Below are positions 481 through 52,930 of a DNA stretch of 64,000 nt, piece by piece. The notes under the pieces were generated by a model. It was not told the DNA's origin and did not search any database. It saw only the letters and a program-made list of their open reading frames with translations. A program made the position numbers and the translations under genes. Source of the stretch: Macrostomum lignano (lineage: Eukaryota); the NCBI GenBank assembly GCA_002269645.1, contig NIVC01002482.1, forward strand, positions 62,304 to 126,303, in the 5' to 3' direction. Every line of letters starts with the position of its first letter. The first letter of the stretch is position 1.

Positions 481-813
481 CCGATAAAAATAACTGTTAG
501 ATTTAACCTTCTCCTTAGATCACTTCACACTTCAGATTGAATTGGAGTTTAGACTACTAGCAGTATTATTGAATGACTTCTGCCTCAGCAACAGCACTAC
601 TGAACAAAGTGAGCAAAAGTGTGCGCCTAATTCAGCTACTGAAACAGGGGACAGATAAGGAATCACCCAATCAAGCAAGTCTAGGCAGCCTCTCACCCAA
701 CCAATCAGAAACTCAACAGCCGGAGACCAGGTAATCCACAGCGACCGAATCGGCTTGATGCTTCGCAGCTGTAGACTCGGGATGATGCTGACACAATCTT
801 CGCAGATAGCTAG

Positions 814-1083
814 TGTTTTGATGGTTCATTCAATAAATTGAGTCTTCGCAGTAAGCGACTATTTTTCGGCTACTAGCCAACCGAACAAAACAACCAGCGT
901 GCGCACTCTCTCTGGAGAGGCTGATAACTATATATTGCAATAATTTTAAATAAATGGGGTGGGTGCTGCTGAACATTATAAATGGGGGCTGGGGCTGAAA
1001 CGTACGTATCAAAATCTCTGCTATGAAAGTTACGCGTAGGTGAATGAAAAGTACACTCGTACATGTAAGCCAACTCCTAAACA
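814..1083 (-). repeat. 3' LTR of BEL/Pao element
   Basis: Read base by base, identical to 7577-7846; TG...CA ends; the PPT abuts it. Confidence 0.95.
827..859 (-). other. Spliced-leader-like sequence in the 3' LTR
   Basis: Minus strand GTCGCTTACTGCGAAGACTCAATTTATTGAATG versus recalled M. lignano SL ...GTCTCTTACTGCGAAGACTCAATTTATTGCATG: 31/33 identical. The SL reference is from memory and needs checking. Confidence 0.75.
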
Positions 1084-1096
1084 TTCCCCCCTTCCT
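1084..1096 (-). promoter_or_regulatory. Polypurine tract (AGGAAGGGGGGAA)
   Basis: Pure purine run on the minus strand immediately 5' of the 3' LTR. Confidence 0.9.
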
Positions 1097-1690
1097 GACA
1101 GAGCAATGTCAGCAACAAAGACCGGAAACACTGAACTTGAGTACCTAGTAACCGAACGGACAAACTATGACCATAGCAAAAAAAAACATACAACGCCTGG
1201 GAACAGCACGAGAAGCGTGAGGGCTCAAAAGAGCTCAAAAGCCAAACTGAAAAGATGTTTCGGCACCCGCCACCAAGACTCGCAAATGAAAACAATGAAA
1301 ATGCGCAAGACCGCAAACTGAAATAAGTTACCACTAAACATAAAAAAATATAAAAATTTGCAACTCAGCTTAACTCGCAATTTTAATAAAGTCGAAAATG
1401 GTTGACAGAAAAAACCCATCACCGTAACTTAACAGAAACTTCAAACAGCTCAAACTCAAAGGAAAAACAAATGCGCCAACTGCGCTCCAAAAAAATCTGA
1501 TCCCAAAAAAAACCATGAACAAAAACAGACACAACCAATAATCAAAAAGGCAACGGCTTGAAAAGCCCAAAACTGGCAGAAAGCCTACTGAACGCACACG
1601 ATACAGTACAAACAATTTGAAAACTCAGCGTAAACTCGGAAAAGTCCGGAAAAGAAAACAAACAGTTCTTAAGCAAATGATCAACTCCTC

Positions 1691-4600
1691 TCACTCGAGA
1701 TAGCACAGTTTGCTCACAGGCCGCACGAATACCGTCCCACCGACCTGGACCTTGGCCACCCGGACTCGATTGTCTGAACCTGGGTAGACTTCGACTACTC
1801 GTCCCAACGGCCAGTGTCCCCGCGGTGAGTCTGCTTTGATGACGAGAACGACATCACCTGGCTGTAAATCACGCTGCGGTCCCGCCCACTTGGCTCTCGG
1901 CTGCAACCCTGGCAGCCATTCGCGCATCCAGCGTCGCCAGACGTGCCTCACGAGTTCTTGGACGCGCCGCCACCGCCGCCTCGGGTCAGCCGCGACGTCG
2001 TCGGGCACATCCGGCGCGAATTGTCCACCAGCTTGACCGTGCAGGAAATGGTTTGGCGTTAGTGGCTCTTCGTCTCTCGGATTCGCCGATTGATAGGTGA
2101 TGGGGCGCGAGTTGATAAGCGCCTCCGCTCCAGTGATCGCTGACTGAAGCTCCTCGTCGGTGACATCTGCGCTGCCCAGAATCGCGTGTAGCGCTCGCTT
2201 CGCAGCCCGAATCATCACCTCGTGGGCTCCACCAAAGTGCGGGGCGGCTGGCGGCTGGAAGTTCCACTTGACTCGCTGCTTGGATGTCTCGCGACTGATC
2301 CTTGTCCTGTCCAGCTCCTCCAGAAGTCGCAGTTCATCTGCACCTTTTACAAAGTTGCCACCGTTGTCAGAATACATAGCCTTGGGTAAGCCACGCCTGT
2401 TCACCATTCGGTAGAAGGCGTTCAAGAAAGAGTCCGCGTCAAGGCTGTAGGTCATCTCGAGGTGTACCGCTCGCGTCTCGAGGCATGTGAACAGCGCCAA
2501 ATAGCGTTTCTGCCTCTTCTTAAATCGGCCTTGAATAGTGACGAACGGCCCTCCCATGTCGACGGCTACGTTCGTGAAGGCTTTTAAGGATCCTGCGACA
2601 CGGGCATCAGGCAGTGGCGCCATCTGTTGTACGATGGGACGAGCTTTCTCTCTCTTGCACACAGCGCATTCAACCTCCCACTCGCGAATAGCTTCCCGAG
2701 CACAGATAACCCAATACTTGGCTGACAGCGCCGCCAGAGTTTGGTTAGTCCCACCATGGCTCTGCTGCTCGTGATATTGTTTGATGATCAGCTTGGTGAT
2801 CCAATGCTTCCGCGGCAAAATAGATGGATGTCTTGCTGCAAATGGCGCCTGTGGCCTGAATTTCAACCGGCCATCCACTCGTAGGACTCCTGCTGCATCA
2901 CGTACCGGCTGCAAGCACCGCAGCTTCTTCTCGTTCACTGTATCCGTCTTGAACGCTTCCTCCTGAGCTAACCTTACCAAACGCTCCTCGACCTCCTCGA
3001 GCTCATCCACCAACAGCTCACCGCCGCTCCGCTGATACTTCTCCGTCTGACAGTTCCGAATGAACCGCAACACCCAAGCGAAGACGCGCTGCAGTCGATG
3101 GAAACTAGAGAATCGCTCTGGTTTGAGTCGCCAGCCTGTCTTGTCTTCTTCATCGGTGGTGACCAGACATACGGGCTCTGCACAACGCTTCTGGATGCTT
3201 GCTAGCTCTCTTCGACGGGTATTCGCCTCAGTAGTTTCTGGCGCAACTGGAATCGGCATTTCTGGCCAATCGTTTGAGCACCTCGCCAAGAATCCAGGGC
3301 CGTTCCACCACAGCTCGTTGTCCATCAGCTCTTGCACACTGCAGCCACGGGATGCCACATCCGCTGGATTCAGACCTGTTGGAACGTACCGCCATTGATT
3401 TGGCTGCACCTGCTGCTGGATGAAGGCGACTCGGTTCGCAACGAAAGGCTTGAACGCTCTACTCTGCCTGCGAATCCACCAAAGCACATTGTGACTGTCA
3501 CTCCAAAACACCACAGACTCAATCGCGATCTCCAACGCCTCGGCCACTGCCCTTGCGAGCCGAAGTCCTAGGACTGCCGCCATCAACTCCAGTCGAGGGA
3601 TGCTCACCGCCATCAATGGTGCTACCTTAGCCTTTGCAGCAACGAAACGGACCGTCGTCTTACTCATCGTTTCGCTCCGCAGATATACGACGGCTCCGTA
3701 GGCCTCTTGCGATGCGTCTACAAACGAGTGAAGTTCGATGGATCCGTTGTCTGGACGCAGACACCGAGGCACGGCTAGTCTCGTAGCTTTGGAGAGCTCA
3801 CTGGTCCACTGAAACGCTTGATCAGCCAACTCAGGATCCAACGCTTCATCCCACCCAACACCTTGTTGCCATGCCAACTGCAGCATTATCTTTCCTGTGA
3901 TAACTACCGGAGCTAGGAAGCCACAGGGGTCAAACACCTCGGCCACACCGCGCAAAAGCAGTCTCTTCGTCATCACCTTGCCGCTAGCATTCGACTCGCT
4001 GATGGAAATTCCTAGGACGTCCTCTTTCGCATTCCAATTCACTCCAAGCGCCTTAGCGGTTCGGGCCTCACCTTTCAATAGCAACTCGGCGCGTTCTGCG
4101 CGGTCCTCGACTGGAACGTGTTGCAGCACTTCTAACGAATTCGACATCCATTTGCAAGCTCGCATCCCTGCCTTGCTCCATAATTCTACGAGTTGTTGGA
4201 AGAGTTTCACCGCTTGGCCAACGGTTTCTACGGAGTCTAGACTGTCGTCCATATAAGTGGAATGCAGCACGGTGTTGGCCGCCAGCGGCAGCTGTTGCTG
4301 ATAGTGTCGCGCATTCTCCTGTGCCACAAACTGAGCCAGAAACGGAGAGCAGTTTACGCCAAATACCACACTGCAGAACTCATAGCTCTTCGGCGTTTGC
4401 TTCAAGTCTAAGTCTCGCCACAGAAATCGGAAAAATCTTCTGTCCTCCGGCGCAATTCGAACTCTCAGATACATCTCCTCGATGTCGGCTGCTAGCGCCA
4501 CGGGATGCTTCCGGAACCGTAGGAGCACCTTTAGCAAATCCTGCTGCAACTTCGGTCCCGTATGAATGGTGTCATTTAGGCAGACCCCATTGCTCCGAGC

Positions 4601-5299
4601 CGCTGCATCAAACACAATTCGAACTTTGGTCGTCTCCTTATCGGCCCGCACTATCGCGAAATGCGGCAAGAACCACTGGCCAGCCTGACTTGGCTCGCTG
4701 ATGCCGACCTCCCGCACATAGCCTTTTGCCAGATGCTTGTCTATCACAGCCTGGTACGCCTTCGCTAGCTCCGGGTTCTTCAGCAAGCGCTTTTCTGTGC
4801 TGACGAGACGCTGTAGGGCAGCTTCGTTGTTCATAGGTAGTTCTTCCGGATTCTTTTTCCAAGGAATCGCCACTTGAAACCTGCCGTTCTCCATCTTCAA
4901 GGATGCTCGTGTCGCTTCTACGATCTTTTGATCTTCAGCGGACATTCTGGCCTGCTGTCCTCCATCTGGCACTTCATCGATCTCCCACATCTTCCGCAGA
5001 AGATCAGATGCCTCGTTCTCCGCCGTCACCGTAAAGAATGTCTGCTGCTGCTGCTCTTCTGCAGTTCCTACTTGATTCACTGGTCCAACGCAGGTCCACC
5101 CAATTGGCGTCAGTCTGGCAATCGGCTCTCCAGGTTGCCCACCTACTTCGCGACAGGCAAAGTGCAAGTCTGCATTGTCCACACCAATGAGCATATCCAC
5201 AGTCTGCTTCCCTTTAATTTTGTCGAACGGCACGCCCCTCAGATGAGCCCAACGCTTTGCAAGCTGGCTCCAATCTACGGCTTCCATCCCACCGGTCAC
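1691..5299 (-). CDS. BEL/Pao pol: reverse transcriptase, RNase H, integrase
   Basis: YMDD RT motif; Pao RNase H IELHSFVDASQEAYGAVVY; integrase H..H..C..C and DDE (VAVDMGGP, YSDNGGNF, FGGAHE); C-terminal W-rich domain. Confidence 0.95.
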   Translation of the reverse strand: MTGGMEAVDWSQLAKRWAHLRGVPFDKIKGKQTVDMLIGVDNADLHFACREVGGQPGEPIARLTPIGWTCVGPVNQVGTAEEQQQQTFFTVTAENEASDLLRKMWEIDEVPDGGQQARMSAEDQKIVEATRASLKMENGRFQVAIPWKKNPEELPMNNEAALQRLVSTEKRLLKNPELAKAYQAVIDKHLAKGYVREVGISEPSQAGQWFLPHFAIVRADKETTKVRIVFDAAARSNGVCLNDTIHTGPKLQQDLLKVLLRFRKHPVALAADIEEMYLRVRIAPEDRRFFRFLWRDLDLKQTPKSYEFCSVVFGVNCSPFLAQFVAQENARHYQQQLPLAANTVLHSTYMDDSLDSVETVGQAVKLFQQLVELWSKAGMRACKWMSNSLEVLQHVPVEDRAERAELLLKGEARTAKALGVNWNAKEDVLGISISESNASGKVMTKRLLLRGVAEVFDPCGFLAPVVITGKIMLQLAWQQGVGWDEALDPELADQAFQWTSELSKATRLAVPRCLRPDNGSIELHSFVDASQEAYGAVVYLRSETMSKTTVRFVAAKAKVAPLMAVSIPRLELMAAVLGLRLARAVAEALEIAIESVVFWSDSHNVLWWIRRQSRAFKPFVANRVAFIQQQVQPNQWRYVPTGLNPADVASRGCSVQELMDNELWWNGPGFLARCSNDWPEMPIPVAPETTEANTRRRELASIQKRCAEPVCLVTTDEEDKTGWRLKPERFSSFHRLQRVFAWVLRFIRNCQTEKYQRSGGELLVDELEEVEERLVRLAQEEAFKTDTVNEKKLRCLQPVRDAAGVLRVDGRLKFRPQAPFAARHPSILPRKHWITKLIIKQYHEQQSHGGTNQTLAALSAKYWVICAREAIREWEVECAVCKREKARPIVQQMAPLPDARVAGSLKAFTNVAVDMGGPFVTIQGRFKKRQKRYLALFTCLETRAVHLEMTYSLDADSFLNAFYRMVNRRGLPKAMYSDNGGNFVKGADELRLLEELDRTRISRETSKQRVKWNFQPPAAPHFGGAHEVMIRAAKRALHAILGSADVTDEELQSAITGAEALINSRPITYQSANPRDEEPLTPNHFLHGQAGGQFAPDVPDDVAADPRRRWRRVQELVRHVWRRWMREWLPGLQPRAKWAGPQRDLQPGDVVLVIKADSPRGHWPLGRVVEVYPGSDNRVRVAKVQVGGTVFVRPVSKLCYLE

Positions 5300-6714
5300 T
5301 TTCTCAGTTGTGTGGGCCGTAACTGTGGCACGAAAGGCGCCGTCCAGACTGCGGATGTCGACCTCAACCGGAACGTCTGAAAGGTGCTCACCTGGCCGTT
5401 CAGAACCTTTACCGTCATCGGTTCGAGGTTGCCTTCCAAGCCGAGTTCCGCTGCAACGTCAGAGTTCAGGTACGACCGGGTGCTAGCGTCGTCCAGCAAG
5501 ACATTCACTCGGACTTCCCGACCGCCGTTGGATAAAATCACGGGCACAGTCCTCAGCGCTATTGACGGCGATGTTCTGGCCAGTAAAGTGCATGCCTCTT
5601 GCGGCTCTTGAACTGTGCTCTTCTTCTCCTGGAAGGACTTTGGTCTTTCGATCGTTTTGGGCGACCCCCCTTCATGCGGATTCGCCGTTGTCGCCGCCGG
5701 CCCTCGTTGATGCAGCAGCCGATTATGGTTTGCTTTGCAGCCATCAACACCGCACACTCTCGCTCGCTTGCACGCACCGGCTAGATGGTTTGCTCCCAAG
5801 CAGCAGAAGCACAGGCGCTTGTCACGAACCGTCGCCCATCTGGCTCCAGGTTCCATTCGTTGAAACCTTGGGCAGCTCCAAACTCCGTGCTGTTCTCCGC
5901 AGAGACCACAACCTTTTCGCCCTTCCGCCTGTTCTTTGTTTTGGCTATTCGAATCATTCGTCTTCACAAAAAACGAGCGTGCTGCGGCTGCCCCTCGGGA
6001 AACAGTTTTCTTGGCTTTTACACTGTCGTGCCGTCCGGTCTCACCGGAAGAAGCCACGCCTCTTACCGCCTCACACGCTACTGTCATGTACTCTGCCTCC
6101 GTCAGAAGCCATCGATGCAACGTTCTGAGCGAATCTTCTTTCCTAGCTTCTCCGATCCACCGATGAAAACGAGCTAGGGTTTCGGTTGGCAGCTTCTTTT
6201 GCACTCTCAAGTACATAAGTCCATTGTTGCTTAGCTCACTCTCTCGCCCTGCAGCCTGTAGATTAACTACCGTAACATCCAGCAAGTCGGCCAGCTTTTT
6301 TAATTGACTTGCATTCTCTATCTGAATAGGTTGGAAACTATCCAAGTCCTCCAGTGCCAGCATCAGTCTTCGTCTCTCTCCACCATACTCCCGCTCAAGC
6401 CTTTCCAGAGCCGCTTTGTAGGCGAACTCCGAGTAGCCAAGATTCGCAACAAGTTTTAATGCCTCTCCTCGCAGCGACTGGCGCAATTGCAACAACTTAT
6501 AGGCTTCTGAAGATGGCGAGGCATGCACGCAGGCATAGAAAGCCGCCCGCCATCCTTCAAACTCCCGTTTGTCTCCACTAAACACCGGTATCGCAACTCT
6601 CTGCAACTGCCTCCACATATCCTGACCGATTCTTTCCTCAGCCCAAGCTTTCGCTGTACATTCTGCTGCGGCGGCCGGTGAAGCCCCAATTGGCGAATTA
6701 GCTCCACCGTACAT
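5296..6714 (-). CDS. BEL/Pao gag core, three Cys/His knuckles and aspartic protease
   Basis: FSGDKREFEGWRAAF (DUF1759-like), CGLCGEQHGVWSC / CFCCLGANHLAGAC / CGVDGCKANHNRLLH, protease LLDDASTRSY. The frame is open from 6828. Confidence 0.88.
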   Translation of the reverse strand: MYGGANSPIGASPAAAAECTAKAWAEERIGQDMWRQLQRVAIPVFSGDKREFEGWRAAFYACVHASPSSEAYKLLQLRQSLRGEALKLVANLGYSEFAYKAALERLEREYGGERRRLMLALEDLDSFQPIQIENASQLKKLADLLDVTVVNLQAAGRESELSNNGLMYLRVQKKLPTETLARFHRWIGEARKEDSLRTLHRWLLTEAEYMTVACEAVRGVASSGETGRHDSVKAKKTVSRGAAAARSFFVKTNDSNSQNKEQAEGRKGCGLCGEQHGVWSCPRFQRMEPGARWATVRDKRLCFCCLGANHLAGACKRARVCGVDGCKANHNRLLHQRGPAATTANPHEGGSPKTIERPKSFQEKKSTVQEPQEACTLLARTSPSIALRTVPVILSNGGREVRVNVLLDDASTRSYLNSDVAAELGLEGNLEPMTVKVLNGQVSTFQTFRLRSTSAVWTAPFVPQLRPTQLRK

Positions 6715-6809
6715 AGCTTGGATACCTAGCTGTCCGCGGGGTTGGTTAGAATCAGCGTGGTCACACTTGCCGCCAGTTGGGGTGGGTGGTATTGATTTTT
6801 TTCCGGCCT

Positions 6810-7514
6810 TTACTCTCTCACCCCTTGCTCAGCGCTCCTTAGTTGATCTGACCCTCCCCCAATTAAGGGGTTGACTGAAGGGTCGGCTTGAACCATGGGG
6901 TTGGCGACTGGTACTGAGTACGCAGCTTGCGATTGGACGGCCGCTTCTACCCGTAGTTGAGAGGAGTACAATTGATCATTTGCACTCGCTGACGTCTCTG
7001 CCAGTCTTAGCGCATCCAATCTGACATCTAACTCGCGCTGCCTCTCTGCAAACTCCTGCTGCATTCTGCGCTCCTCCTCCTCCATCTCTATCCGCTGCCG
7101 CCTGACTGCCTCCAACTCCTTCTGTCGCATCTCTTTCTGCTCGATCTCCCTCGACTCTAGTCGCACCTCTCGTTCCCTCTTGCGCAATTCTCTCAGCAAA
7201 TTTACAATCTCACCGTACTCAGTCTCCAGCTTTTCCAACTCCTTTACTGTCTGGACTTGCACTGGTAGATTCCCGACGACCTCGGGCAGAATCGCTTGTA
7301 GCACCGCACTAACTCGCTCGTAGTGGTCATCCAGAGTGCCGGCCAGCGGTTCCACGTCCGCTAAAGTAGCTCCGTCCGAGCCCAATACCTTCAGTAGACG
7401 ATTCCGCTGCTTCGTGAACGCGCACTTGTCGACCGCTTTTCTGGCCTTCAGCAAAATGAGACGGCTGTCTCCCTCCGGCACTTGTTCTTGCATCTCTGCT
7501 TCTTCATCAGACAT
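6810..7514 (-). CDS. BEL/Pao gag N-terminal coiled-coil region (separated from the rest by a -1 frame break)
   Basis: 234-aa ORF starting 42 nt after the PBS; E/R/Q-rich helical sequence; overlaps the next open frame at 6810-6828. Confidence 0.75.
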   Translation of the reverse strand: MSDEEAEMQEQVPEGDSRLILLKARKAVDKCAFTKQRNRLLKVLGSDGATLADVEPLAGTLDDHYERVSAVLQAILPEVVGNLPVQVQTVKELEKLETEYGEIVNLLRELRKREREVRLESREIEQKEMRQKELEAVRRQRIEMEEEERRMQQEFAERQRELDVRLDALRLAETSASANDQLYSSQLRVEAAVQSQAAYSVPVANPMVQADPSVNPLIGGGSDQLRSAEQGVRE

Positions 7515-7556
7515 CTTTTACCAATGAAGTAGAACCACAAGTAGAACCACAAGTAG

Positions 7557-7574
7557 AACCACGCTCTGCTACCA
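7557..7574 (-). promoter_or_regulatory. Primer-binding site, tRNA-iMet type (TGGTAGCAGAGCGTGGTT)
   Basis: Starts 2 nt after the 5' LTR. Complementary to the conserved 3' end of eukaryotic initiator tRNA-Met (...AACCACGCTCTGCTACCA). Confidence 0.85.
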
Positions 7575-7576
7575 GA

Positions 7577-7846
7577 TGTTTTGATGGTTCATTCAATAAA
7601 TTGAGTCTTCGCAGTAAGCGACTATTTTTCGGCTACTAGCCAACCGAACAAAACAACCAGCGTGCGCACTCTCTCTGGAGAGGCTGATAACTATATATTG
7701 CAATAATTTTAAATAAATGGGGTGGGTGCTGCTGAACATTATAAATGGGGGCTGGGGCTGAAACGTACGTATCAAAATCTCTGCTATGAAAGTTACGCGT
7801 AGGTGAATGAAAAGTACACTCGTACATGTAAGCCAACTCCTAAACA
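7577..7846 (-). repeat. 5' LTR of BEL/Pao element
   Basis: Identical to 814-1083; followed after 2 nt by the PBS on the minus strand. Confidence 0.95.
7590..7622 (-). other. Spliced-leader-like sequence in the 5' LTR
   Basis: Same 33-mer as 827-859; it ends 13 nt before the LTR end and PBS. Confidence 0.75.
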
Positions 7847-9114
7847 GCTAGTAGGTGATGTCTTAACTTTGATGTTCGCTGCTGGTGACCGGGGGACTCG
7901 TCCTTGATGATGAGGGGGAAGTCGCAATCCGGGGATCAAGAAACGACGGTCGGGCTGAGGGAACCAGAAATATTGGGAGAGAGCCGGTTGAGGTCCGAGC
8001 GGGCCAAAAACACCGGTTTAAATAGCCGCCAACTGGACCACAGTTTGTTATAATGGAACACGTCGATTCTGATTGGCTGAGCCGTTTTGTTAAAATGAGC
8101 GCCGAATTTTCTGATTGGCTAAGCTGGTTGCCACCCAGAATCACGTGACCGGGAGATCCTATCAGTTCCCACAGGGTCGTAAAAAGATGACAGGTGCGGC
8201 CATAAATCACTCAAAATCGCAACAAAATGATATATGACCTTTCGCGTAGGATTGACAGAAATTAATGAAAAAATATACATTAGAAAGCTCTTATTAAATA
8301 GAAAGTGAAGATAATGAAGAGAAATCGCTAATCGCTAATCCCAAGGTACTTTTAGGGGTAAAACGCATAGCTGTCAAAGCTGTCACACGCTTGAGTGAAC
8401 CCGAACAATAGGCTCTGACCTCATAAATCTTGATGGCCTGTCAAAATGATGAGAAAAAAGCTACCGCCCGCATCCTCTCAGACCATCTGGCGCCCGCCTC
8501 AACACTGAGTGAGGCGCAGGTGGCTGTCAGACCAGCTTCGAAAGCGATGATTTATGATCCAAAAAGCTGCGCCTATGTTATTTTGACTACTAGTATGACC
8601 AAACATTATATCAAGTATAGATTCTATGACTATTCGCAGAAAAAGGATAAAAATGCCCATTGCCCACTGTTAGTAGGCTAGTAAGTTTAGAGCCCATGTG
8701 CTAGCGCGGGGTTTGGAAAAAAGTGCGTCCTCATCACATGGTTCATAATCATATGTACATGTACACGTATACATGTAATCTGTGAAACTGATGTTGATCA
8801 ATTCAGAAGGCTGCCATTATACATGTAGCTGCCATAAAAGTATTGAAGTTTGCGGTGTGCATCGAAACAATACATTAAATAACCCTTGAAATCATTCAGG
8901 AGGTAATACTGATATACATGTAGTCTCGGCCGACTGACCTCTTTTATCTGAACAGGTGCAGATGACCCTTTATTTAAGTGTATAGATATAACAAAGTCAG
9001 TAAGTCAATGACGAAATCAACGCACAACAATAAAATATGACGAGTTTTAACTATTAACTCTTGTTCATAATCATGAGTAATCTTACAGACTAATAAACTT
9101 TCATTTTTAAAACG

Positions 9115-12519: not shown

Positions 12520-13025
12520 TTTTTCGCAATGCCAACTGAGATGAGCGACTAGATCTAGGGGCAGAGGTCACAGTGGACCGGAAGCGACACAGGTCCCAGT
12601 CAATCAGTCGATCTAAGCAATCATGATAAACATGCAAACTATAAGGGCCAGACTGGTGCCTTCGTGCAGTCTCAGGCAGCTAAGCGGCTAAAACGAGTTA
12701 AATGTTAGTCTAAAGATCTCCAAAGGTGACAATACACCTACATTATCGCTATCTGTCGACGTGTTAACACATTTAGTGCCAAAAGCGTGCAGTTACGTGT
12801 ACTTGTACATGTACTTCTGGGAATTTGGTAATGATGTAGTACATTGGGCGGTGCTTGAAAGCTCGCCACCGCAAGAACCCCCTGCAGAAGTCCTCTCTCA
12901 GTCCCTGCATGGCCAATGCGAACTTTAGTCCCAGCAGTGTCCCTTCTATTCGGCTATGACTTCGAGATAGACAGCTAAAAGACACTATAGATGGCAGGTA
13001 AGTGCAGTGCCCTTCTAGTCGAAAG
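12520..13025. repeat. Diverged dispersed repeat, inverted homolog of 1-480
   Basis: Shared blocks such as GGCTATGACTTCGAGATAGACAGC, GGCAGGTAAGTGCA and GGTCCACTGTGACC. Confidence 0.7.
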
Positions 13026-17112: not shown

Positions 17113-18535
17113 CAACGACATCTGCAGCAGAGTCCTGTCCCGCTGCCGCATGCTGTCCTGCCTCGCGGCTCGGGACTGGGGTTGGCGCAAGGAGCGCCTT
17201 CGCGGCGTCTACCTGGCTATGCAGCAGAGCCTTCTTAACTACGCGGCCCCGGCTTGGCAACCTTGGCTTTCCAGCACCTCCTTCGAGCGCCTTGAGCGCG
17301 CGCAAAACCAGGCCCTCAGAATCGTCACGGGCTTGCACCGCTCGGCGCCGCTTGACGCTGTGCACCTGGAGGCCGGCATCGGCAGCTACAGGAACACCAG
17401 CGACCGCCTTTGCCTCATCGCCAGGGAACGCGCGCTCAGGCTGCCCAACGACCATCCTCGCGCCATCGCCCTCTCGGGCACCGTGCAACACCGGCTCGCC
17501 CGCAGTAGCTGGAGACTCCGCTCGGCTCAGCTTGCCAATGGCCTTGGCATTGATCTCACGCCGCGTCTGCCGCTCACACCGGCCTTCCCATGCCCCTGGC
17601 TGGACCAACATCTTCCGGCGATCCTAGCTGACAATCCTTTGCCTCCGGCCACCACGCCCCCGTTGGAGCGCTGTCTTGCCGCTCTCGACGTCATCCGGTC
17701 TCACCCGGCTGAGCTCGTCATTTACTGCGATGGTTCGGCGGCCGGCGGCTCCGAGGCTGGCGGGGCGGCCGCTGTGGTCACCATCGGAGACCCGGCAGTC
17801 CCGACGACCGTGGAAGCCCGCACGTCCGCTGGCAGCCGCTACACCAGCTCCTTTGAAGAGGAACTCCGCGCTCTGGTCCTAGCCCTCGACTACCTCCGCT
17901 CGCACCCCACGCGCCCTGCCATCATCTGCTCTGACAGTCAGTCTCTTCTGCGCGCCCTTCAGCGTCCCTTCAGCCGCCTGGCCTCTTCCCTCCGCTTCCC
18001 GCACAACTGCCGCGCTCTCCTGTGGGTCCCGGGTCATGTCGGCATTCCGGGCAATGAACTCGCGGACCGCGCTGCTAACTCCGCTGCCGCCAACGCCGAT
18101 GAAGCACCGCGCCCCAGCATCAGTTTTCCCACTGCCGCCTCGGTGATCCGCCGCACTCTGGTTGACAAGCCGGTCACCCACGCGAGATCTCGTCTCACCT
18201 ATGCCTCCGCCGACGCCGAAAAGGAACGTCGGCTTATTACTAACCGCAAAGACGCTGTCCTTCTTGCCCGGCTGCGCTCCGGCCACTCCAGCCTCTTCGG
18301 AGCCTTCCGCGCCCTCATGGACCCCACGGTGGATCCGACGTGCCAAAGGTGCTTCCTCGAACCAGACACCCTTGAGCACTGGACAGCGTGCCCTGCTCTC
18401 GAGGCCGCCCGCCGTCGCTTCATTGGAGCTCCGCTCTCCCTCAGCAACTTGTCCGATTACCCTGATGGTTTGGTCGCGCTGGCCAGGTTCTGCATGGATC
18501 CTGGGCGCGTTTGGGCCAACTAACAACAACAACAA
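17113..18535 (+). mobile_element. 5'-truncated non-LTR retrotransposon (I-group/ingi-like: RT thumb, RNase H, CCHC)
   Basis: ORF 17150-18523 with LERAQNQALRIVTG, RNase H IYCDGS / EEELRAL / CSDSQS / WVPGHVGIPGNELAD, and knuckle CQRC..EHWTAC. (CAA)n tail directly after the stop. Confidence 0.9.
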
Positions 18536-20450: not shown

Positions 20451-21043
20451 CAGCGTCAGGGGGAATACAGCATTCCTATTTCTCTACTATAGGTAGAATC
20501 AAGAGAAATATGTGGGACTTTTATACAGCCACAGTTACAGCAACAGCAGGCAATCAAAAGCAGTGTACTAAATTTTTTGATAAGAACGAGGCGCTAAAGT
20601 TTTGAGGAGTTGATTATTCACAATAGAGTTTTGTCAAAGGGATTTTTTTGTGCCTGTGACGAACGCCTTTGATATACAGTGCGTTTGAGTTGCTAGGAGA
20701 TTGTTGGTTTCTATAGCTCTCCAAAATCTCGATATATTGCATAAATTTGAACATGATCAAAGGCTTATGGTAATTTGACCATTGATCTGATAAACAAATA
20801 TTCTTGGATGGTTATGATATTATTTTGTCTTTTCTTTACGGAGTGCGCAGTTGAAATTGTCTGGCATCAAGCCATGAATGAAATAATGGCAGGGATTGCA
20901 CTGAAATGGATTCTTTACTTTCGTTTAAAAATGTCTTGAAAAATAATTATTTCATAATTATGATATAAAAATACAGAAATAGTGCATTTGATAGCTAATT
21001 GTAATTATAATTTAAATAGACTTATTCGTGTATTAAAAAGTGG

Positions 21044-21898
<855 letters not shown>

Positions 21899-22030
21899 GC
21901 AGGCAGGCGACTTCATCGAAAGTTGTTATCTTTTAGTGTCAGTGTCAGTGTTAGCAGTGTCATTGCAAACAAGAAATTCGAAAACGATTTTTTCAATATT
22001 TGAAGTTAGCAACTCTGGACACCGAGCCGT

Positions 22031-25000: not shown

Positions 25001-28000
25001 AATTGGCGCGATTCAGCCAGTAGCCGTAGGTGTTGTCGACGCTTATTGCAGTTGTGAGACTCTCGCCTAAACTTGCGAGCAGCTCCACTTGCCCGAGAAT
25101 CTCGCCCTCGCCTAGCAAGGCAATCTCGACCTGACGACTGCGCTGCCTCTGCTCAGCAGCCTGGTAGCCCTGACGATGTCGAAGCAGTCCCGCCTGCACG
25201 GCCGCTGCAGCCGGAGCCGGAGTCGCTGCCGGCGCCGCTGAAGATTGTTCGTCCTTCTCTGACTTCTGGATGCTCGCCGGCCACCTGATTGGATCGGCGA
25301 GCAGCTTCACGGATCCTCTTGACAGATGGGAAATGAATGCACTTTGCTTTATTCTGGTTCGCTCCTAGAATCAAATTTCTCGGTTTTATTTTTTACGTTT
25401 GTTTCCCTACATAGAAGCATATTTTAACGAGACTTGAGTTTGAAGGCAAAGTTGCACCTGAATTTGGACTTATTGTCATGGCAACTACCGGTTGTCTATC
25501 AAGGCCCCCGTAGACGAAAAAATTCAACAGGTCTACTATTTTTCCTCTCTCCCCCTGGAGCAGGCTTTCTCATTGCACTGGGAGGCTCACCCCAAACCCA
25601 TAGCAGTGTCTGAATGGTCGGGTGGTCAGCAGTGCGGCCTCCACCACCCCCGCCCCTTACTGGGGATCATGCAGCCAGGTATCAGCAACAGTAGAGGCAG
25701 TTTTTGGGAGCCGGGAAATTTCAGCTGAGGTGGTGGAAGCAACCGGAGCAAGCATTGTCTTGCAGCAGCAATGCTTGGGATACGAGGATATACCTACACT
25801 TGCTAACCATGCACGCATTGGAAACACGTGACAACTTCACGTTTCTCACGTCCATTTATTGAAGCACACTTCTGCATCCTAAACCTGGCATGATTACTCT
25901 GAAATTCAACTACCTCGCAGCTGTCAGATCCTAAGTGGAGATGCTTCAAAATTAATATCCGGGTATTTAAAGTTTGAGTATACCGTACGTGAAGCCGGGT
26001 GTAATTCGGGTTTGTGAATTTTGTAGATTTTGAAACGCCCTCCTCGAAAATGGGACGATGTCATGTCACCGAAGGCTTTGCGCCAGGTGCCCGCAGCCAT
26101 AAAATTATCATATATTACAATATTATAGCTATTAAGTGGATGGACTCGCTTCCTCACCCAACAATAAAGAACAGGCCTCCGCTCTTCTGTCCCTGCTGCA
26201 CAATCGGCTCGCCGTATCCGTACACCTCCTTGTGCAGGCTGTTGCGCAGGCTCTGCCGCTGCTTCGGTCGCCAGTTGACGAACACAGGGCAGGTGTCTAT
26301 GAAGCTCTCGATCATCTGGTACTCCTGCAGCTGGTAGGCTTTAAGAGTTCTAGCAAATGACACCTGGTGAATTACTAGCACTGCGACATCCTCATCGCAG
26401 ATGACGGACGCCTTACGGATGCTGTTAGGACTGGTGAGGGCGATCTCGCCGAATGCGTAGCCCTCGCCCATCTGCAGCACGTGAGCGCCTAGCAAGCGGC
26501 TGCGCAACTCTTCTGCGTCCTCGCCGTGACTGGCTAATTTATTAGCATCATCGAGGAAGGCCAAGTCCACATCCTCGTCGGCATCTTCCGCATCCGCCTC
26601 TGGGTCCCGATCCGCTTGGTTGGGACCCCCTGCGCCTGAAGCTGAGGCGTCGGCAGCAGTGACAGACTCCGAGGCCTGCTCGGCATCGCTGTTGACATAC
26701 ACGGAGACGCGTCCGGTGATCACCAGGTAGAAACTGTGGCCCTTCTCGCCCTGCCGAATGATCAGCTCATTGGCATGGAAACGCTGCAGGTGGCAGTCGC
26801 GAACGATTTCTCGAATAGCGTCTGGAAAGATTTTTTAACGAGTTGAAATCACAAATGCTAGAATAACTAGATGGGCCACTCAACACATTTGCGTGCAAGC
26901 TACTTTCAGTTCAGTAGCAAGTTAAACTGAAGCATTTTAATGTATTTTTAAAGACAAAGATTACAGGCTGCGTATTTACGAGTTATTGGCTCTTACCCCC
27001 CCCCCCATTTTAAACATTCAAACTCCACTCAAAACCTTTACCCCTGCCCCGCCACCCAATTTTTTTACTTTCCCCGGTTGTTCGAGCCTAAATCTGCCAT
27101 GTACATTTCAGTGGCTTATCATGTACATTATGGTTGAACCAATTAGCAAGCTGTTAACGCCTGCAAGCTTGGGCTTCTGAACTTATCAAAGTCATCTCAG
27201 CTGCCTTTATTCTTATAAAATAGCTTAGGTATTCTTCATTGCTACTGAAATGAAAGTAGAAAGCTGTTTTGCTAGGTATTTATGCCTGAGTGGCCAATCG
27301 AGTCATATTCTAGTATCTGAGGTTGAAATTGAGTTCGAGACCCCGAGTTTGATTCATAAACAACTGAAGTAAGTAGGACGCTACAGTCGATTTTGTTTGA
27401 AGTTACTTTTCAAAAAGGGTTGCAGACTAGTGGTTAGAGCGTCGGACTCGCGAATGAAAGGTCGGGGGTTCGATTCTTGACCCACTCGGAACAATTTGTG
27501 TCTTTGAGCAAGACACTTGACTCTGCATTGCTTCAGTTCAACCCAGCTGTAAAATGGGTGCCAGCATTAGCTGGGGTAATTGGGAGTGTGTGTGGCGACC
27601 CCCCAGTCCTTGGACTGAACAGCCGTACGCAGCTTTCAGATGCGCAATAGCTGGAGTTTGTCACGTCGGGCACTCATGCCTAGCTGAAAGTGCGCATAAA
27701 AAGGCAGGACCGCCGTACACCCACCCTGTGTGAGCGTGTGCCTGCGTACATATCCGAGTTCGTGCTCAAAGGGTCAGCAAACTCGGAATGACTGCTTGCC
27801 TCCTGGCTGGCTGCTTGTCGACTTTCGCCATTGAGTTGCGGCACATGACCAAAGCCTCTCTGTATTTTTTCTACATGGCGATAGATTTCAACCGACAATG
27901 CAAACTTTTCGCACTGATTTCTTTTCTTTACAATGCCTGCACAGTCGGTACATGAACTCTCAGACTTCTTGAAACACAAGTGGGCTCCCCCTGCACTGAA

Positions 28001-30114
28001 ATTAGTTTCCTCTCAGTGAGATTAGTTTCCTCTCAGTGAGATTAGTTTCCCTCTCATTGAGATTAGTTTCCCTCCCATTGACATTAGTTTCCAACTCATT
28101 GAGATTCACTTCTGTCATTAAGATTCACTTCTGTCTCATTGAGATTCGCTTCTGTCTCATTGAGATTCACTTCTGTCTCATTGAGATTCGCTTCTGTCTG
28201 ACTGAGATTCACTTCTGTCTCACTGAGATTCACTTCTGTCTCATTGAGATTCGCTTCTGTCTGACTGAGATTCACTTCTGTCTCACTGAGATTCACTTCT
28301 GTCTCATTGAGATTCGCTTCTGTCTGACTGAGATTCACTTCTGTCTCATTGAGAATCACTTCTGTCTCATTAAGATTCACTTCTGTCTCATTGAGATTCA
28401 CTTCTGTCTCACTGAGATTCACTTCTGTCTCATTGAGATTCACTTCTGTCTCATTAAGATTCACTTCTGTCTCGTTGAGATTCACTTCTGTCTCATTGAG
28501 ATTCGCTTCTGTCTGACTGAGATTCACTTCTGTCTCACTGAGATTCACTTCTGTCTCATTGAGATTCGCTTCTGTCTGACTGAGATTCACTTCTGTCTCA
28601 TTGAGAATCACTTCTGTCTCATTAAGATTCACTTCTGTCTCATTGAGATTCACTTCTGTCTCACTGAGATTCACTTCTGTCTCATTGAGATTCACTTCTG
28701 TCTCATTAAGATTCACTTCTGTCTCGTTGAGATTCACTTCTGTCTCATTGAGATTCACGTCTGTCTCATTGAGATTAACTTTTGTCTCATTGAGATTCAC
28801 TTCTGTCTCATTGAGATTCACTTCTGTCTCATTGAGATTCACTTCTGTCTCACTGAGATTCACTTCTGTCTCATTGAGATTCACTTCTGTCTCACTGAGA
28901 TTCACTTCTGTCTCATTGAGAATCACTTCTGTCTCACTGAGATTCACTTCTGTCTCATTAAGATTCACTTCTGTCTCATTGAGATTCACTTCTGTCTCAT
29001 TGAGATTCACTTCTGTCTCATTGAGATTCACTTCTGTCTCATTGAGATTCACGTCTGTCTCATTGAGATTCACTTCTGTCTCATTGAGATTCACTTCTGT
29101 CTCGTTGAGATTCACTTCTGTCTCATTGAGATTCACTTCTGTCTCATTGAGAATCACTTCTGTCTCATTGAGAATCACTTCTGTCTCATTGAGATTCACT
29201 TCTGTCTCATTAAGATTCACTTCTGTCTCATTGAGATTCACTTCTGTCAAACTGAGATTCACTTCTGTCTCATTGAGATTCACTTCTGTCAAACTGAGAT
29301 TCACTTCTGTCTCATTGAGATTCACTTCTGTCTCATTGAGATTCACTTCTGTCTCACTGAGATTCACTTCTGTCTCATTGAGATTCGCTTCTGTCTCATT
29401 GAGATTCACTTCTGTCTCATTGAGATTCACTTCTGTCTCATTGAGATTCACTTCTGTCTCATTGAGATTCACTTCTGTCTCACTGAGATTCACTTCTGTC
29501 TCATTGAGATTCACTTCTGTCTCATTAAGATTCACTTCTGTCTCATTGAGATTCACTTCTGTCTCATTGAGATTCACTTCTGTCTCATTGAGATTCACTT
29601 CTGTCTCATTGAGATTCACTTCTGTCTCACTGAGATTCACTTCTGTCTCACTGAGATTCACTTCTGTCTCATTGAGATTCACTTCTGTCTCATTGAGATT
29701 CACTTCTGTCTCACTGAGATTCACTTCTGTCTCACTGAGATTCACTTCTGTCTCACTGAGATTCACTTCTGTCTCACTGAGATTCACTTCTGTCTCATTG
29801 AGATTCGCTTCTGTCTCACTGAGATTCACTTCTGTCTCATTGAGATTCACTTCTGTCTCATTGAGATTCACTTCTGTCTCATTGAGATTCACTTCTGTCT
29901 CATTGAGATTCACTTTAATAGGTCGAGAGCAAGCGCTTGAACGCAATGGGCTAGCAACAACACCGAACTCAGGAACCAGCGTACCTTTGTTGCGCAGCTT
30001 CCGAAAATATGAGCTGCTGGATTCGATCCACCTGGCCAAGAACTCGATCTCCTCCTCGTTGCGCCCCTCTGGCGCAGTCTCGTACAGGCTGATGACGCGG
30101 TCCGTGAAACTCAT
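22031..30114 (-). CDS. Cyclic-nucleotide-binding-domain protein (CNBD2-like), 5 coding exons, 759 aa
   Basis: Exons 30114-29985, 26821-26158, 25317-24380, 22824-22487, 22240-22031. All junctions are GT-AG and phase-consistent (total 2280 nt). cNMP motifs IIRQGEKGHSFYLVITGRV, GYAFGEIAL..SIRKASV, IVQQGQKSGGLFFIV, LGEGEILGQVE. Confidence 0.85.
22317..22430. repeat. 31-bp tandem repeat in the last intron of the CNBD2-like gene
   Basis: TCCCCTCAACTCAATCCGTGATACTCAGTAT x3-4. Confidence 0.85.
22915..23325. repeat. 30-bp minisatellite (GGATGCTTTCCCGTTGGGTGTTCGCCCGTC) in intron 3
   Basis: About 13 units; the overlapping ORFs are periodic artefacts. Confidence 0.93.
26850..27321. mobile_element. hAT-type MITE (family copy 1) in CNBD2-like intron 1
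   Basis: Imperfect TIR CACAAATGCTAGAATA...TATTCTAGTATCTGAG; perfect 8-bp TSD GTTGAAAT; homologous in inverted orientation to 51639-52072. Confidence 0.88.
27416..27760 (+). mobile_element. tRNA-headed CORE-type SINE (3' end approximate)
   Basis: TAGTGGTTAGAGCG A box, GGTTCGATTC B box, then CORE-like TGTGTCTTTGAGCAAGACACTT...CAGCTGTAAAATGGG; second copy at 55523-55800. Confidence 0.8.
28093..29914. repeat. 21-bp minisatellite (TGAGATTCACTTCTGTCTCAT) in CNBD2-like intron 1
   Basis: About 85 units, each with TGAGA...TCTCA inverted ends. Confidence 0.97.
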
Positions 30115-40834: not shown

Positions 40835-42267
40835 TCACGGATTTAAAAACAGCACTGCCTGGCTGATTGCAGCTGGAATGGCACACAATCTCCAATGGAG
40901 ACAGTCTGAGCTTCTCCAAACCAACTGATGGTGAAACTGGTCAAGCTCCCGTTCAGGTATGTTTGGATCGTGTTCTGGTCGGAGACGGCCAGCGAAGTGA
41001 CGCTCAATTTCCAGCATCTGCTCATTAGAGAGGCTCTTAAACGCATGCTGCTTACAAACAGAACGCCCGTGTCTGTCTTCTTTACTCGTAGCAGCAGCGT
41101 CTGTAACATCGCAGTTCGTGCCTGAAATTCTGTCGCAACACTCCAGTTGACTTTTTAACTGTTCAATCTCCTTTTGGAACTGCCTCAGCATCGCGTGTTT
41201 TGGATCCTCGTTAATCTTGGCATTATTAGTGACTCTCTTTGCTCTACAGGCCAATCTTAACGTACTTATAGTCTCCTTATAGTTACAGTCAACTGGACTG
41301 AAGTTGGCGCACATCAATGTCTTGCTGTTACCACCTAGTGAATCCTTAAGTATACGAGTGAGCTTGCTGTCGCGGTAGGGGATGTGGACACTTTTCCCAT
41401 CAACGAGTGCTGATATCACTTTGCCAAAAGGACTCATAGACATGCCTATCTTAGAGGCCTCCTTCAGCCGCACGCCAGTGACTCCAGCGTTTGACTGACG
41501 CTCGCTACCAGCAAAAACTACAAGATGCAGTTTGCCTTGAAGCACCACTATTTTACCATTTTGGCCTTGCTCTAAACACTCGATTGTTACTGTTAACACC
41601 CTGTTGGATCTAGAGCTTAGCCTGCCCATGCGTGTCGCATGAAACATTCGATTCCTTGCGCCATCGATTAAAAGTTGGTTTATTTCGTCCGGACTGTGAC
41701 ACACAAAGCTGCACAGATCCTTCACGTACACTCCCACATCGGGCCGCTCTTTCACTTCTAGTTTGGCTGTCTGATCCTTGCCCAGCAGGTCGCGCACCTC
41801 CTCGTTGTAGATCTCCAGATACGAGACCCGCACAAGAAAGGTCACATTGGCCGTCGCCTTGCTGATGGCGCCGAAGATGTGAGCAAACGAGTTCGGGATG
41901 ATGCCACGAAGCTCAGGTACGGTCCTGACGCCTTCCATCGTGAAAGTCTTGCCCGTTCCGGTCTGGCCATACGCGAATATCGTGCCATTGTAGCCTTCCA
42001 AACGAAATCGACAATTCGTCTGGCCACTTTGTTATAAATGTCCACCTGCTTGCTCTGCATGCCGAACACGTGATCGAATGTAAATGTCTTAGGCTCTCCC
42101 GCGTGACTGGCCATTCCTTCTTGGCGAACAACATTTGGCTCCGTGATTTCAACTGTTCCTCTGAGCTCGTCAATTTTCACAGTCACCTTGTTGCCTTCGG
42201 TGATCTCTTTTTGACTGAGTGGCCGGCACCTCACCGCCACAATAAAATTATTTTCTTCTTCCGACAT
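40835..42267 (-). pseudogene. KIF3A-like copy B: frameshifted, diverged and truncated
   Basis: 1-nt deletion at ~42001 relative to copy A (GTTCTGGAA to GTTTGGAA). Switch [10 protein letters not shown], switch II VFAGSE; stalk ends after ~90 aa. Confidence 0.75.
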
Positions 42268-52729: not shown

Positions 52730-52930
52730 GATTGGGGTGCACATGGGGTGGGTGGTGTTCTCATGATCAGGTGATTGGGGTGCACATGGGGTGGGTGGTG
52801 TTCTCATGATCAGGTGATTGGGGTGCACATGGGGTGGGTGGTGTTCTCATGATCAGGTGATTGGGGTGCACATGGGGTGGGTGGTGTTCTCATGATCAGG
52901 TGATTGGGGTGCACATGGGGTGGGTGGTGT
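52730..52930. repeat. 43-bp G-rich tandem repeat
   Basis: GATTGGGGTGCACATGGGGTGGGTGGTGTTCTCATGATCAGGT x4-5. Confidence 0.9.

What the first reader, a model, noticed from the sequence alone, without database searches (positions are those of the whole stretch)
7590..7622. LTR retrotransposon carrying a copy of the host spliced-leader exon in both LTRs
Seen: on the element's sense strand, the last ~46 nt of each LTR read GTCGCTTACTGCGAAGACTCAATTTATTGAATG-aaccatcaaaACA (also at 827-859). Recalled from the literature: the M. lignano SL exon ends ...GTCTCTTACTGCGAAGACTCAATTTATTGCATG, giving 31/33 identity in sense orientation. It is not followed by GT or an SL-RNA intron, so it resembles the 5' end of a trans-spliced mRNA, not an SL RNA gene. 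Inference: an ancestral element transcript was SL-trans-spliced and the leader was fixed into R/U5 by reverse transcription, or the element keeps an SL mimic. A mimic could support SL-dependent translation, stability or evasion of small-RNA silencing. Known SL-associated retroelements (SLACS/CZAR, NeSL) are non-LTR elements that insert into SL arrays. I know of no LTR element with an SL inside its LTR, though I cannot search for one.
Basis: partly seen in the sequence, partly recalled or inferred. Interest (0 to 1): 0.88.

Follow-up and report, generated by a model that had tools for sequence, protein, structure and literature searches.

The report
Spliced-leader relic inside a retrotransposon LTR
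A young BEL/Pao retrotransposon carries, near the end of both its terminal repeats, an intron-less copy of the flatworm host's spliced-leader exon, most likely a fossil of a trans-spliced RNA that was reverse-transcribed; this kind of relic has already been noted in other flatworm genomes.

Summary
The 33-mer GTCGCTTACTGCGAAGACTCAATTTATTGAATG occurs exactly twice, at 827-859 and 7590-7622 on the minus strand, with none expected by chance. It matches the published Macrostomum spliced leader (SL) at 31 of 33 positions.

It lies 13 nt from the 3' end of each 270-bp LTR. The two LTRs are 100% identical. The element is a BEL/Pao retrotransposon at 814-7846 on the minus strand, with a 5-bp target duplication (GCTAG), a tRNAiMet-type primer-binding site (PBS) and a polypurine tract (PPT).

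I recovered two genuine SL RNA genes from public contigs (L005, L010). The LTR homology stops exactly at the exon's last base. There is no GTAAG donor, no intron similarity (P=0.74), no Sm site and no SL RNA fold.

The two related elements whose LTR end could be read (L008, L009) share the PBS but lack an intact block.

Best reading: the exon was copied into U5 from a trans-spliced RNA during minus-strand strong-stop synthesis. The resulting variant stayed able to replicate. A mimic function is untested.

Novelty is modest. Boroni 2018 and Calvelo 2025 already report partial SL leaders associated with LTR and LINE elements in parasitic flatworms, with the same explanation. What this case adds is the resolved anatomy: the block sits inside U5 of both LTRs.

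The parts
814..7846 (-). Complete BEL/Pao LTR retrotransposon (7033 bp)
   Evidence: Identical 270-bp LTRs. Pfam hits: Peptidase_A17, RVT_1, Integrase_H2C2, DUF5641, DUF1759.
7577..7846 (-). 5' LTR (TG...CA)
814..1083 (-). 3' LTR, 100% identical to the 5' LTR
7590..7622 (-). SL-exon-derived block in the 5' LTR (LTR positions 225-257), 31/33 identical to the Macrostomum SL
827..859 (-). The same SL-exon-derived block in the 3' LTR
7623..7633 (-). Possible 5' extension of the SL homology (GCCGAAAAATA versus GCCGTAAAGACG of the 45-nt SL). The same sequence lies at 860-870 in the 3' LTR. It also forms one arm of a local hairpin at 7628-7648.
   Evidence: Anchored alignment P about 0.01. Hairpin in the fold. 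Ambiguous.
7577..7589 (-). 13-nt U5 tail AACCATCAAAACA between the SL block and the LTR end (814-826 in the 3' LTR)
7557..7574 (-). Primer-binding site TGGTAGCAGAGCGTGGTT, 2 nt after the LTR. Assigned to the initiator tRNA-Met type from background knowledge of that tRNA's 3' end.
   Evidence: The same PBS occurs in relative L008 and, with one mismatch, in L009.
7569..7592 (-). 7-codon uORF (MNHQNIW*) that starts at the SL-derived AUG and ends inside the PBS
7527..7562 (-). Three tandem 12-nt units GTGGTTCTACTT continuing from the PBS in the leader
7691..7699 (-). TATA-like box AATATATAG in the 5' LTR (928-936 in the 3' LTR). It implies a transcription start about 30-45 nt upstream of the SL block.
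   Evidence: Read from the sequence. The start site itself is inferred, not mapped.
1084..1097 (-). Polypurine tract CAGGAAGGGGGGAA abutting the 3' LTR
   Evidence: Near-identical tracts occur in L007 and L008.
809..813 (.). Target-site duplication GCTAG (second copy at 7847-7851)
6810..7514 (-). N-terminal gag-region ORF (234 aa, frame -2)
5296..6714 (-). gag (DUF1759) and the start of the protease (472 aa, frame -1). It is shifted in frame relative to the N-terminal ORF.
1691..5299 (-). pol ORF (rest of the protease, RT, Pao peptidase/RNase H region, integrase, DUF5641; frame -3). A frameshift lies near 5372, inside the protease region, relative to L009.

Best explanation
The block is a molecular fossil of SL trans-splicing that became a heritable part of the element's U5.

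Proposed sequence of events (inferred):
1. An RNA carrying the host SL at its 5' end served as template while reverse transcriptase was making minus-strand strong-stop DNA from the tRNA primer. The most economical candidate is the element's own transcript, trans-spliced at a site 13 nt upstream of the U5 end.
2. The cDNA therefore copied the 13-nt U5 tail and then the SL exon.
3. A template switch rejoined the rest of the LTR. This was either a copy-choice switch to a co-packaged full-length RNA, or a non-homologous first jump.
4. The product was an LTR of the form U3-R-...-SL-13 nt. Ordinary LTR regeneration then placed it at both ends of the element.
5. The variant remained able to replicate. 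It later produced this young insertion, which has identical LTRs and a 5-bp target-site duplication.

Shown: the anatomy, the homology and its exact boundaries, and the absence of the block from relatives.
Inferred: the reverse-transcription route, and the view that the block is now a passenger with little or no function. Because it lies in U5, it is necessarily transcribed as part of the 5' leader.
For: (1) The block matches the SL at 31/33 positions, in sense orientation, in both LTRs, with none expected by chance.
(2) Homology to genuine SL RNA genes ends at the last exon base. The LTR lacks the GTAAG donor, the intron, the Sm site and the SL RNA fold. Anchored alignment to the intron gives P=0.74. 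This fits a spliced-RNA source, not a gene source.
(3) The block lies 13 nt from the LTR end and 15 nt from the PBS. This is exactly the segment copied first in strong-stop synthesis.
(4) Relatives L008 (58% pol identity) and L009 (46%) have essentially the same PBS, and L008 also the same PPT, but no intact SL block in U5. The block is therefore an acquisition by the element, not the source of the host SL. The SL itself is identical in three Macrostomum species and in two environmental SL RNA genes.
(5) The identical LTRs and the TSD show that an SL-bearing element completed a full replication cycle.
(6) Precedents exist. The C. elegans Cer1 subgenomic RNA is SL1 trans-spliced (PMC3315495). 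SL fragments merged to or associated with transposable elements are reported in S. mansoni and across 24 parasitic flatworm species, with the same explanation (PMC5832876, PMC12582326).
Against: - No other copy of this family could be retrieved, so neither the pre-capture U5 nor the conservation of the block is known.
- The 5' boundary is ambiguous, with two competing signals. A weak extension to the full 45-nt exon has P about 0.01. Alternatively, there may be a junction inside the SL at TCGCTTAC. L008's U5 ends ...TCGCTTACGAACA, and the window reads TCGCTTAC[23 nt of SL]GAAC. That model scores P=0.0002 uncorrected, but it was chosen post hoc and is roughly 0.01-0.1 after allowing for the choice.
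- No trans-splice acceptor is present now (ATG|AACC), so self-trans-splicing of the ancestor is an assumption.
- The differences from the SL are unevenly spread across the 45-nt alignment: 5 of 12 positions at the 5' end against 2 of 33 at the 3' end (Fisher P=0.01). This could equally mean selection on the 3' part.
- The transcription start and poly(A) sites are not mapped, so the R/U5 assignment is inferred.
Confidence: 0.65

Rival explanations
1. Adaptive SL mimic. The block was captured as above but is kept by selection, because an SL-like 5' leader helps the element. Possible benefits are translation or stability like trans-spliced host mRNAs, escape from small-RNA silencing, or removal of a trans-splice acceptor that would otherwise decapitate the genomic RNA.
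For: The 3' 33 nt are much better preserved than the putative 5' 12 nt (Fisher P=0.01). The block has survived at least one full replication cycle. L008's U5 shows a faint SL-like stretch, GACGATCTCGTTGCGCAGTCT, matching 17 of 21 positions. If real, this would imply an old capture that is kept intact only in this lineage.
Against: The L008 similarity is not significant (P=0.075). The block is probably 30-45 nt from the cap rather than at the 5' end, judging from the TATA position. An encoded copy would not carry the trimethylguanosine cap; this rests on established knowledge of SL RNAs. Its AUG creates a uORF ending in the PBS, which is a likely cost. The leader shows no unusual structure (z=-0.65). 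No population of copies was available to test constraint.
Confidence: 0.15
2. Template switch to a foreign SL-bearing RNA. During strong-stop synthesis the reverse transcriptase jumped briefly onto a co-packaged host trans-spliced mRNA or free SL exon, then jumped back using the CTTAC/TCGCTTAC microhomology. The element's own RNA was never trans-spliced.
For: L008 has TCGCTTAC directly followed by GAAC. These are the sequences that flank the 23-nt SL-only segment in the window. This would also explain the T>G difference as ancestral U5 sequence.
Against: It needs two switches, and the first must land by coincidence on the last one or two bases of the SL exon. The match to L008 was noticed post hoc. 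The window also has an extra CATCAAA relative to L008's LTR end, so the insertion is not clean.
Confidence: 0.15
3. DNA-level capture of part of an SL RNA gene, for example by recombination or transduction after insertion next to an SL array.
For: SL RNA genes are repeated in the genome (PMC8629364), so encounters with them are plausible.
Against: No intron, donor, Sm site or upstream gene sequence is present. The homology is limited to the exon. The flanks of this insertion are not SL array sequence.
Confidence: 0.03
4. Chance resemblance or assembly artefact.
For: None.
Against: No matches are expected by chance. The block lies in both LTRs of a structurally complete, TSD-flanked element.
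Confidence: 0.01

Closest known systems
Genome-encoded partial SL leaders associated with LTR/LINE elements in parasitic flatworms (Calvelo et al. 2025, PMC12582326; Boroni et al. 2018, PMC5832876)
   Same: An SL exon sequence without SL RNA features, sitting in or next to retrotransposons in a flatworm. The explanation is also the same: integration of retrotransposon transcripts that had been trans-spliced.
   Different: Those papers treat the loci as contaminants to be filtered out. In the text I read they give no anatomy. Here the block is resolved inside U5 of both LTRs of an intact-looking BEL/Pao copy in a free-living Macrostomum-type genome. This shows the SL became a replicated part of the LTR rather than the 5' end of a dead copy.
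Relict DinoSL in dinoflagellate retrogenes (Slamovits & Keeling 2008; PMC3229502, PMC6050394, PMC8045281)
   Same: DNA-encoded SL remnants at the 5' end of transcription units, which mark reverse transcription of trans-spliced RNA.
   Different: The relics tag host retrogenes, often as stacked repeats, not a transposon's terminal repeat. The organisms and the SL are unrelated.
SL1 trans-splicing of the C. elegans Cer1 LTR retrotransposon subgenomic mRNA (PMC3315495)
   Same: Shows that LTR-retrotransposon transcripts are substrates for SL trans-splicing.
   Different: In Cer1 the SL is added to RNA only and is not encoded in the element. The full-length genomic RNA is not trans-spliced.
SLACS/CZAR/NeSL-1 site-specific non-LTR retrotransposons (background knowledge, not tested in the literature tools)
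   Same: An association between a retroelement and SL sequence.
   Different: Those are non-LTR elements that insert into SL RNA genes. This is an LTR element that carries an SL copy and is inserted at an unrelated site (TSD GCTAG).

Membership tests
BEL/Pao LTR retrotransposon | Long terminal repeats ending TG...CA, flanked by a short target-site duplication | tested here: met
   270-bp identical LTRs, TGTTT...AAACA ends, 5-bp TSD GCTAG.
BEL/Pao LTR retrotransposon | Pao-type peptidase/RNase H region (Peptidase_A17) with RT and integrase in pol, and a DUF1759 gag | tested here: met
   Peptidase_A17 2.5e-48, RVT_1, Integrase_H2C2, DUF5641, DUF1759. The best homologues carry the same domains.
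BEL/Pao LTR retrotransposon | PBS after the 5' LTR and PPT before the 3' LTR | tested here: met
   PBS at 7557-7574 and PPT at 1084-1097; PBS shared with L008/L009 and PPT with L007/L008.
BEL/Pao LTR retrotransposon | Intact gag-pol reading frame (an autonomous copy) | tested here: not met
   Three frames are used. There are frame breaks at about 6715-6810 and about 5372 relative to L008/L009. These could be real mutations or assembly indels.
SL RNA gene | Splice donor (GTAAG) immediately after the SL exon | tested here: not met
   The LTR reads ATG|AACCATC. L005 and L010 read ATG|GTAAGACACC.
SL RNA gene | Sm-binding site and a three-hairpin SL RNA fold downstream of the exon | tested here: not met
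   No intron similarity (P=0.74). The LTR block fold has z=-0.25, against z=-3.46 for the L005 SL RNA.
SL-relic retrocopy (reverse-transcribed trans-spliced RNA) | A genome-encoded SL exon in sense orientation at the 5' part of a transcribed unit, with homology limited to the exon | tested here: met
SL-relic retrocopy (reverse-transcribed trans-spliced RNA) | The parent transcript is demonstrably SL trans-spliced | not testable with these tools
   No RNA data are available for the host. The current copy has no acceptor at the junction.
SL-array-specific non-LTR retrotransposons (SLACS/CZAR/NeSL) | Non-LTR architecture and insertion at a fixed site inside SL RNA genes | tested here: not met
   The element has LTRs, a PBS and a PPT. 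Its flanks are not SL RNA gene sequence.

The most novel reading that the evidence does not exclude
The SL block is not a passive relic but a maintained module. In this reading it was captured before the window and L008 lineages split, which the faint SL-like stretch in L008's U5 would then reflect. It has since been kept, or repeatedly refreshed by copy-choice with trans-spliced RNAs, because an SL-like leader benefits the element. The benefit could be host-like translation or stability, exemption from small-RNA surveillance, or abolition of a trans-splice site that would destroy the genomic RNA.
Probability: 0.12. Interest if true: 0.75.

Novelty: new member of a known kind. Interest (0 to 1): 0.38.

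Why it matters
This is a clean, well-resolved example showing that SL trans-splicing and retrotransposon replication intersect. A host leader exon can be written into U5 and then be copied with the LTR, rather than only marking dead retrocopies.

There are practical consequences. LTR-borne near-perfect SL copies can mislead SL-read-based gene-boundary annotation and SL RNA gene searches in flatworm genomes. Searches restricted to 100% matches, as in PMC8629364, would miss them. Looser searches would pick them up as false SL RNA loci, as PMC12582326 found.

If family-wide data showed constraint on the block, it would become a testable case of a transposon mimicking a host mRNA signature.

Tried and rejected
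- Rfam scan of the window: no family matched. Rfam has no model matching this SL RNA; only U1 was found in L010.
- tRNA scan of the window: none found.
- Search for same-family copies:
  - Protein search with pol gave a best hit of only 64% identity.
  - The N-terminal ORF gave no hits.
  - gag gave 44% or less over most of its length, plus one M. lignano UniRef fragment at 54% with no DNA available.
  - Viral-contig scans for the PBS, the SL and pol found nothing.
  - As a result, conservation of the block within the family could not be tested.
- L007, the closest relative, ends 60 nt into its 3' LTR, so its U5 is unknown.
- Supplements of the M. lignano LTR-retrotransposon paper are not held as text.
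- Capture from the SL RNA gene or promoter: rejected. There is no intron similarity and no significant similarity upstream of the exon.
- The host SL deriving from the LTR: rejected. The SL is conserved across species, whereas the element's relatives lack it.
- The SL block acting as an R-like homology for trans-spliced RNAs: rejected. No acceptor precedes the 13-nt tail.
- An ancient SL remnant in L008/L009 U5: not significant (P=0.075 and 1.0).

Full report
OBSERVATION

The 33-mer GTCGCTTACTGCGAAGACTCAATTTATTGAATG occurs exactly twice in the window, at 827-859 and 7590-7622, both on the minus strand. With up to three mismatches allowed there are no further matches, and none in 100 dinucleotide shuffles. 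A looser BLAST with the 45-nt leader finds nothing else in the 64 kb.

The published M. lignano spliced leader (SL) is CGGTCTCTTACTGCGAAGACTCAATTTATTGCATG (PMC8629364). [quoted passage not shown] (PMC10468722 supplement).

THE ELEMENT

A 7033-bp element lies at 814-7846 on the minus strand. Its two 270-bp LTRs (814-1083 and 7577-7846) are 100% identical. Its other features are:
- TG...CA LTR ends and a 5-bp target duplication, GCTAG.
- A polypurine tract, CAGGAAGGGGGGAA, at 1084-1097.
- A primer-binding site, TGGTAGCAGAGCGTGGTT, at 7557-7574, two bases after the LTR. I assign it to the initiator tRNA-Met type from background knowledge of that tRNA's 3' end.
- Pfam domains DUF1759 (gag), Asp protease, RVT_1, Peptidase_A17 (Pao), Integrase_H2C2 and DUF5641. 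This makes it BEL/Pao.

The coding region uses three frames. Relatives use one frame for the gag region, and L009's pol gene reads through the point in the protease where the window changes frame. The breaks lie at about 6715-6810 and about 5372. This copy is therefore either defective or affected by assembly indels.

The SL block occupies LTR positions 225-257. It is followed by 13 nt (AACCATCAAAACA), the LTR end, the dinucleotide TC, and the PBS. It therefore lies in U5, or in R/U5, and must be part of the 5' leader of the genomic RNA. A TATA-like box (AATATATAG, 7691-7699) sits about 65-75 nt upstream. This suggests a transcription start 30-45 nt before the block, although the start site is not mapped. 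The SL-derived AUG opens a 7-codon uORF (MNHQNIW*) that ends in the PBS.

WHAT THE BLOCK IS NOT

One metagenome scan and one genome scan for the SL core returned three kinds of sequence:
- Five metatranscriptome contigs that begin with the SL joined to unrelated coding sequence. These are trans-spliced mRNAs (L001-L004, L006).
- An SL RNA gene in L005.
- An SL RNA gene in L010. L010 is labelled as a Flavobacteriaceae MAG contig, but it also carries a U1 snRNA gene (151.7 bits), so it is eukaryotic contamination.

Both SL RNA genes read GCCGTAAAGACGGTCTCTTACTGCGAAGACTCAATTTATTGCATG|GTAAGACACCG..., followed by a hairpin, AUUUUUAG and a terminal hairpin. The L005 RNA folds far better than shuffled versions of itself (z=-3.46). 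The two genes are identical through the exon and the first 11 intron bases.

Aligned to these genes, the LTR homology ends at the last exon base. The next 28 nt of the LTR align to the intron no better than random window sequence does (P=0.74). The block has no SL RNA-like fold (z=-0.25). It is therefore a copy of the spliced exon, not of the gene.

THE 5' BOUNDARY

BLAST limits the homology to the 33 nt. Upstream, GCCG-AAAAATA resembles GCCGTAAAGACG, the first 12 nt of the 45-nt exon. An anchored alignment gives P of about 0.01. However, these bases also form one arm of a local hairpin in the LTR.

There is a competing signal. The relative L008 ends its U5 with ...GAATCGCTTACGAACA. The window reads ...AGTCGCTTAC[TGCGAAGACTCAATTTATTGAAT]GAACC... 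Removing those 23 nt yields a 12-mer shared with L008 (P=0.0002 uncorrected). I noticed this after the fact, and I estimate P of 0.01-0.1 after allowing for the choice of deletion. On that reading the T>G difference is ancestral U5 sequence, and the junction used CTTAC microhomology.

I cannot decide between the two readings without more family members.

RELATIVES

The closest retrievable elements are as follows.
- L007 (64% pol identity) has a near-identical PPT. It ends 60 nt into its 3' LTR, so its U5 is unknown.
- L008 (58%) has the same PPT and PBS. It contains a complete LTR lying between pol and gag.
- L009 (46%) has the same PBS with one mismatch, and verified 249-bp LTRs.

Neither L008 nor L009 has an intact SL block. 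A 17-of-21 match in L008's U5 to SL positions 9-31 is not significant (P=0.075), and L009 shows nothing.

The block is therefore an acquisition in the window element's lineage. The SL is the conserved partner, being identical in three Macrostomum species and two environmental genes.

MECHANISM (inferred)

Minus-strand strong-stop DNA starts at the PBS and copies U5 toward the RNA 5' end. Suppose the template RNA carried the SL joined 13 nt upstream of the U5 end. This would be the case if the element's own transcript had been trans-spliced there. The cDNA would then read 13 nt followed by the SL, which is the observed order and orientation, with an exon-precise junction.

A switch to a full-length RNA, by copy-choice at microhomology or by a non-homologous first jump, would restore the upstream LTR. 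Normal LTR regeneration would then put the composite at both ends.

The identical LTRs and the TSD show that such an element completed at least one more cycle. The two differences from the host SL show that the capture predates this insertion.

FUNCTION

Nothing here shows a function. The leader has no exceptional structure (z=-0.65). The block is probably not cap-adjacent, and it adds a uORF.

The uneven spread of differences, 5 of 12 positions at the 5' end against 2 of 33 at the 3' end (Fisher P=0.01), has two possible explanations. Either the 3' part is under constraint, or the 5' part is not homologous at all.

COMPARISON WITH WHAT IS KNOWN

The literature search found the kind already described.
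- In S. mansoni, 32 genome-encoded SL exon copies were reported, six of them merged to transposable elements. The authors suggested they are 'trans-spliced retro-transcribed elements' (PMC5832876).
- Across 24 parasitic flatworm species, 597 candidate SL loci were discarded because they sat in or near LTR and LINE elements and had only partial leaders. The same explanation was offered (PMC12582326).
- C. elegans Cer1 shows that an LTR-retrotransposon RNA can receive SL1 (PMC3315495).
- Dinoflagellate retrogenes carry relict DinoSL.
- SLACS/CZAR/NeSL are a different phenomenon: non-LTR elements that insert into SL genes (background knowledge).

In what I read, none of these papers gives the anatomy seen here, namely the SL inside U5 of both LTRs, 13 nt from the LTR end. 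This anatomy shows that the leader became a replicated part of the element.

VERDICT

The origin by reverse transcription of a trans-spliced RNA is well supported by the boundaries. The mimic function is untested. I rate the finding a new member of a known kind, of moderate-to-low interest unless family-wide data reveal constraint on the block.

Noticed in passing
window 37846-39924, 40835-42001, 43281-45350 (minus strand): Three tandem, apparently intron-less kinesin motor ORFs (Pfam Kinesin, 1e-87 to 1e-120). Two of them have TTCCAG just upstream of the ATG, which fits the M. lignano trans-splice acceptor motif YTNCAG. None has an encoded SL.
   Followed up: partly
window 7527-7562 (minus strand): Three perfect tandem 12-nt units, GTGGTTCTACTT, which start inside the PBS and continue into the leader. 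They might be extra primer-binding or packaging/dimerisation sequence.
   Followed up: no
window 5372 and about 6715-6810: Two frame changes within gag-pol relative to relatives L008 and L009, despite 100% identical LTRs. They are either disabling mutations in a very young copy or homopolymer indel errors in the assembly.
   Followed up: partly
window 61079-63640: A long, nearly perfect palindrome. The arms are 98-100% complementary over about 1 kb each, around a roughly 500-bp centre. It could be a foldback element or an assembly artefact.
   Followed up: no
window 20956-22000, 27974-30100, 52743-52930: Tandem arrays with periods of 8, 21 and 43 bp. The long ORFs over the first two are translations of the repeats.
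   Followed up: no
window 26884-27295 and 51660-52045; also 39-100 and 12926-12987: Inverted-repeat pairs of 84-96% identity, 24 kb and 12.8 kb apart. The second pair brackets the BEL/Pao insertion, so the element may lie inside another mobile element.
   Followed up: no
window 17150-18523 (plus strand): An ORF with an RNase H domain (1.2e-11), probably a fragment of another retroelement.
   Followed up: no
L010 1121-1283 and 1589-1696 (JAGQZA010000190.1, labelled as a Flavobacteriaceae MAG): The contig carries a eukaryotic U1 snRNA gene (Rfam, 151.7 bits) and a Macrostomum-type SL RNA gene. It is flatworm contamination in a bacterial MAG.
   Followed up: yes
L005 615-722 and L010 1589-1696: The two SL RNA genes are identical from GCCG onward and diverge beyond about 5 nt upstream. 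Together with the 45-nt M. cliftonense leader, this suggests the Macrostomum SL exon is about 45 nt, not the 35 nt usually quoted.
   Followed up: partly
L008 3790-4275: A single LTR lies between the end of pol and the start of gag. This indicates tandem elements sharing an LTR, a one-LTR circle, or an assembly collapse. Its U5 has a weak similarity to the SL (17 of 21 positions, P=0.075).
   Followed up: partly
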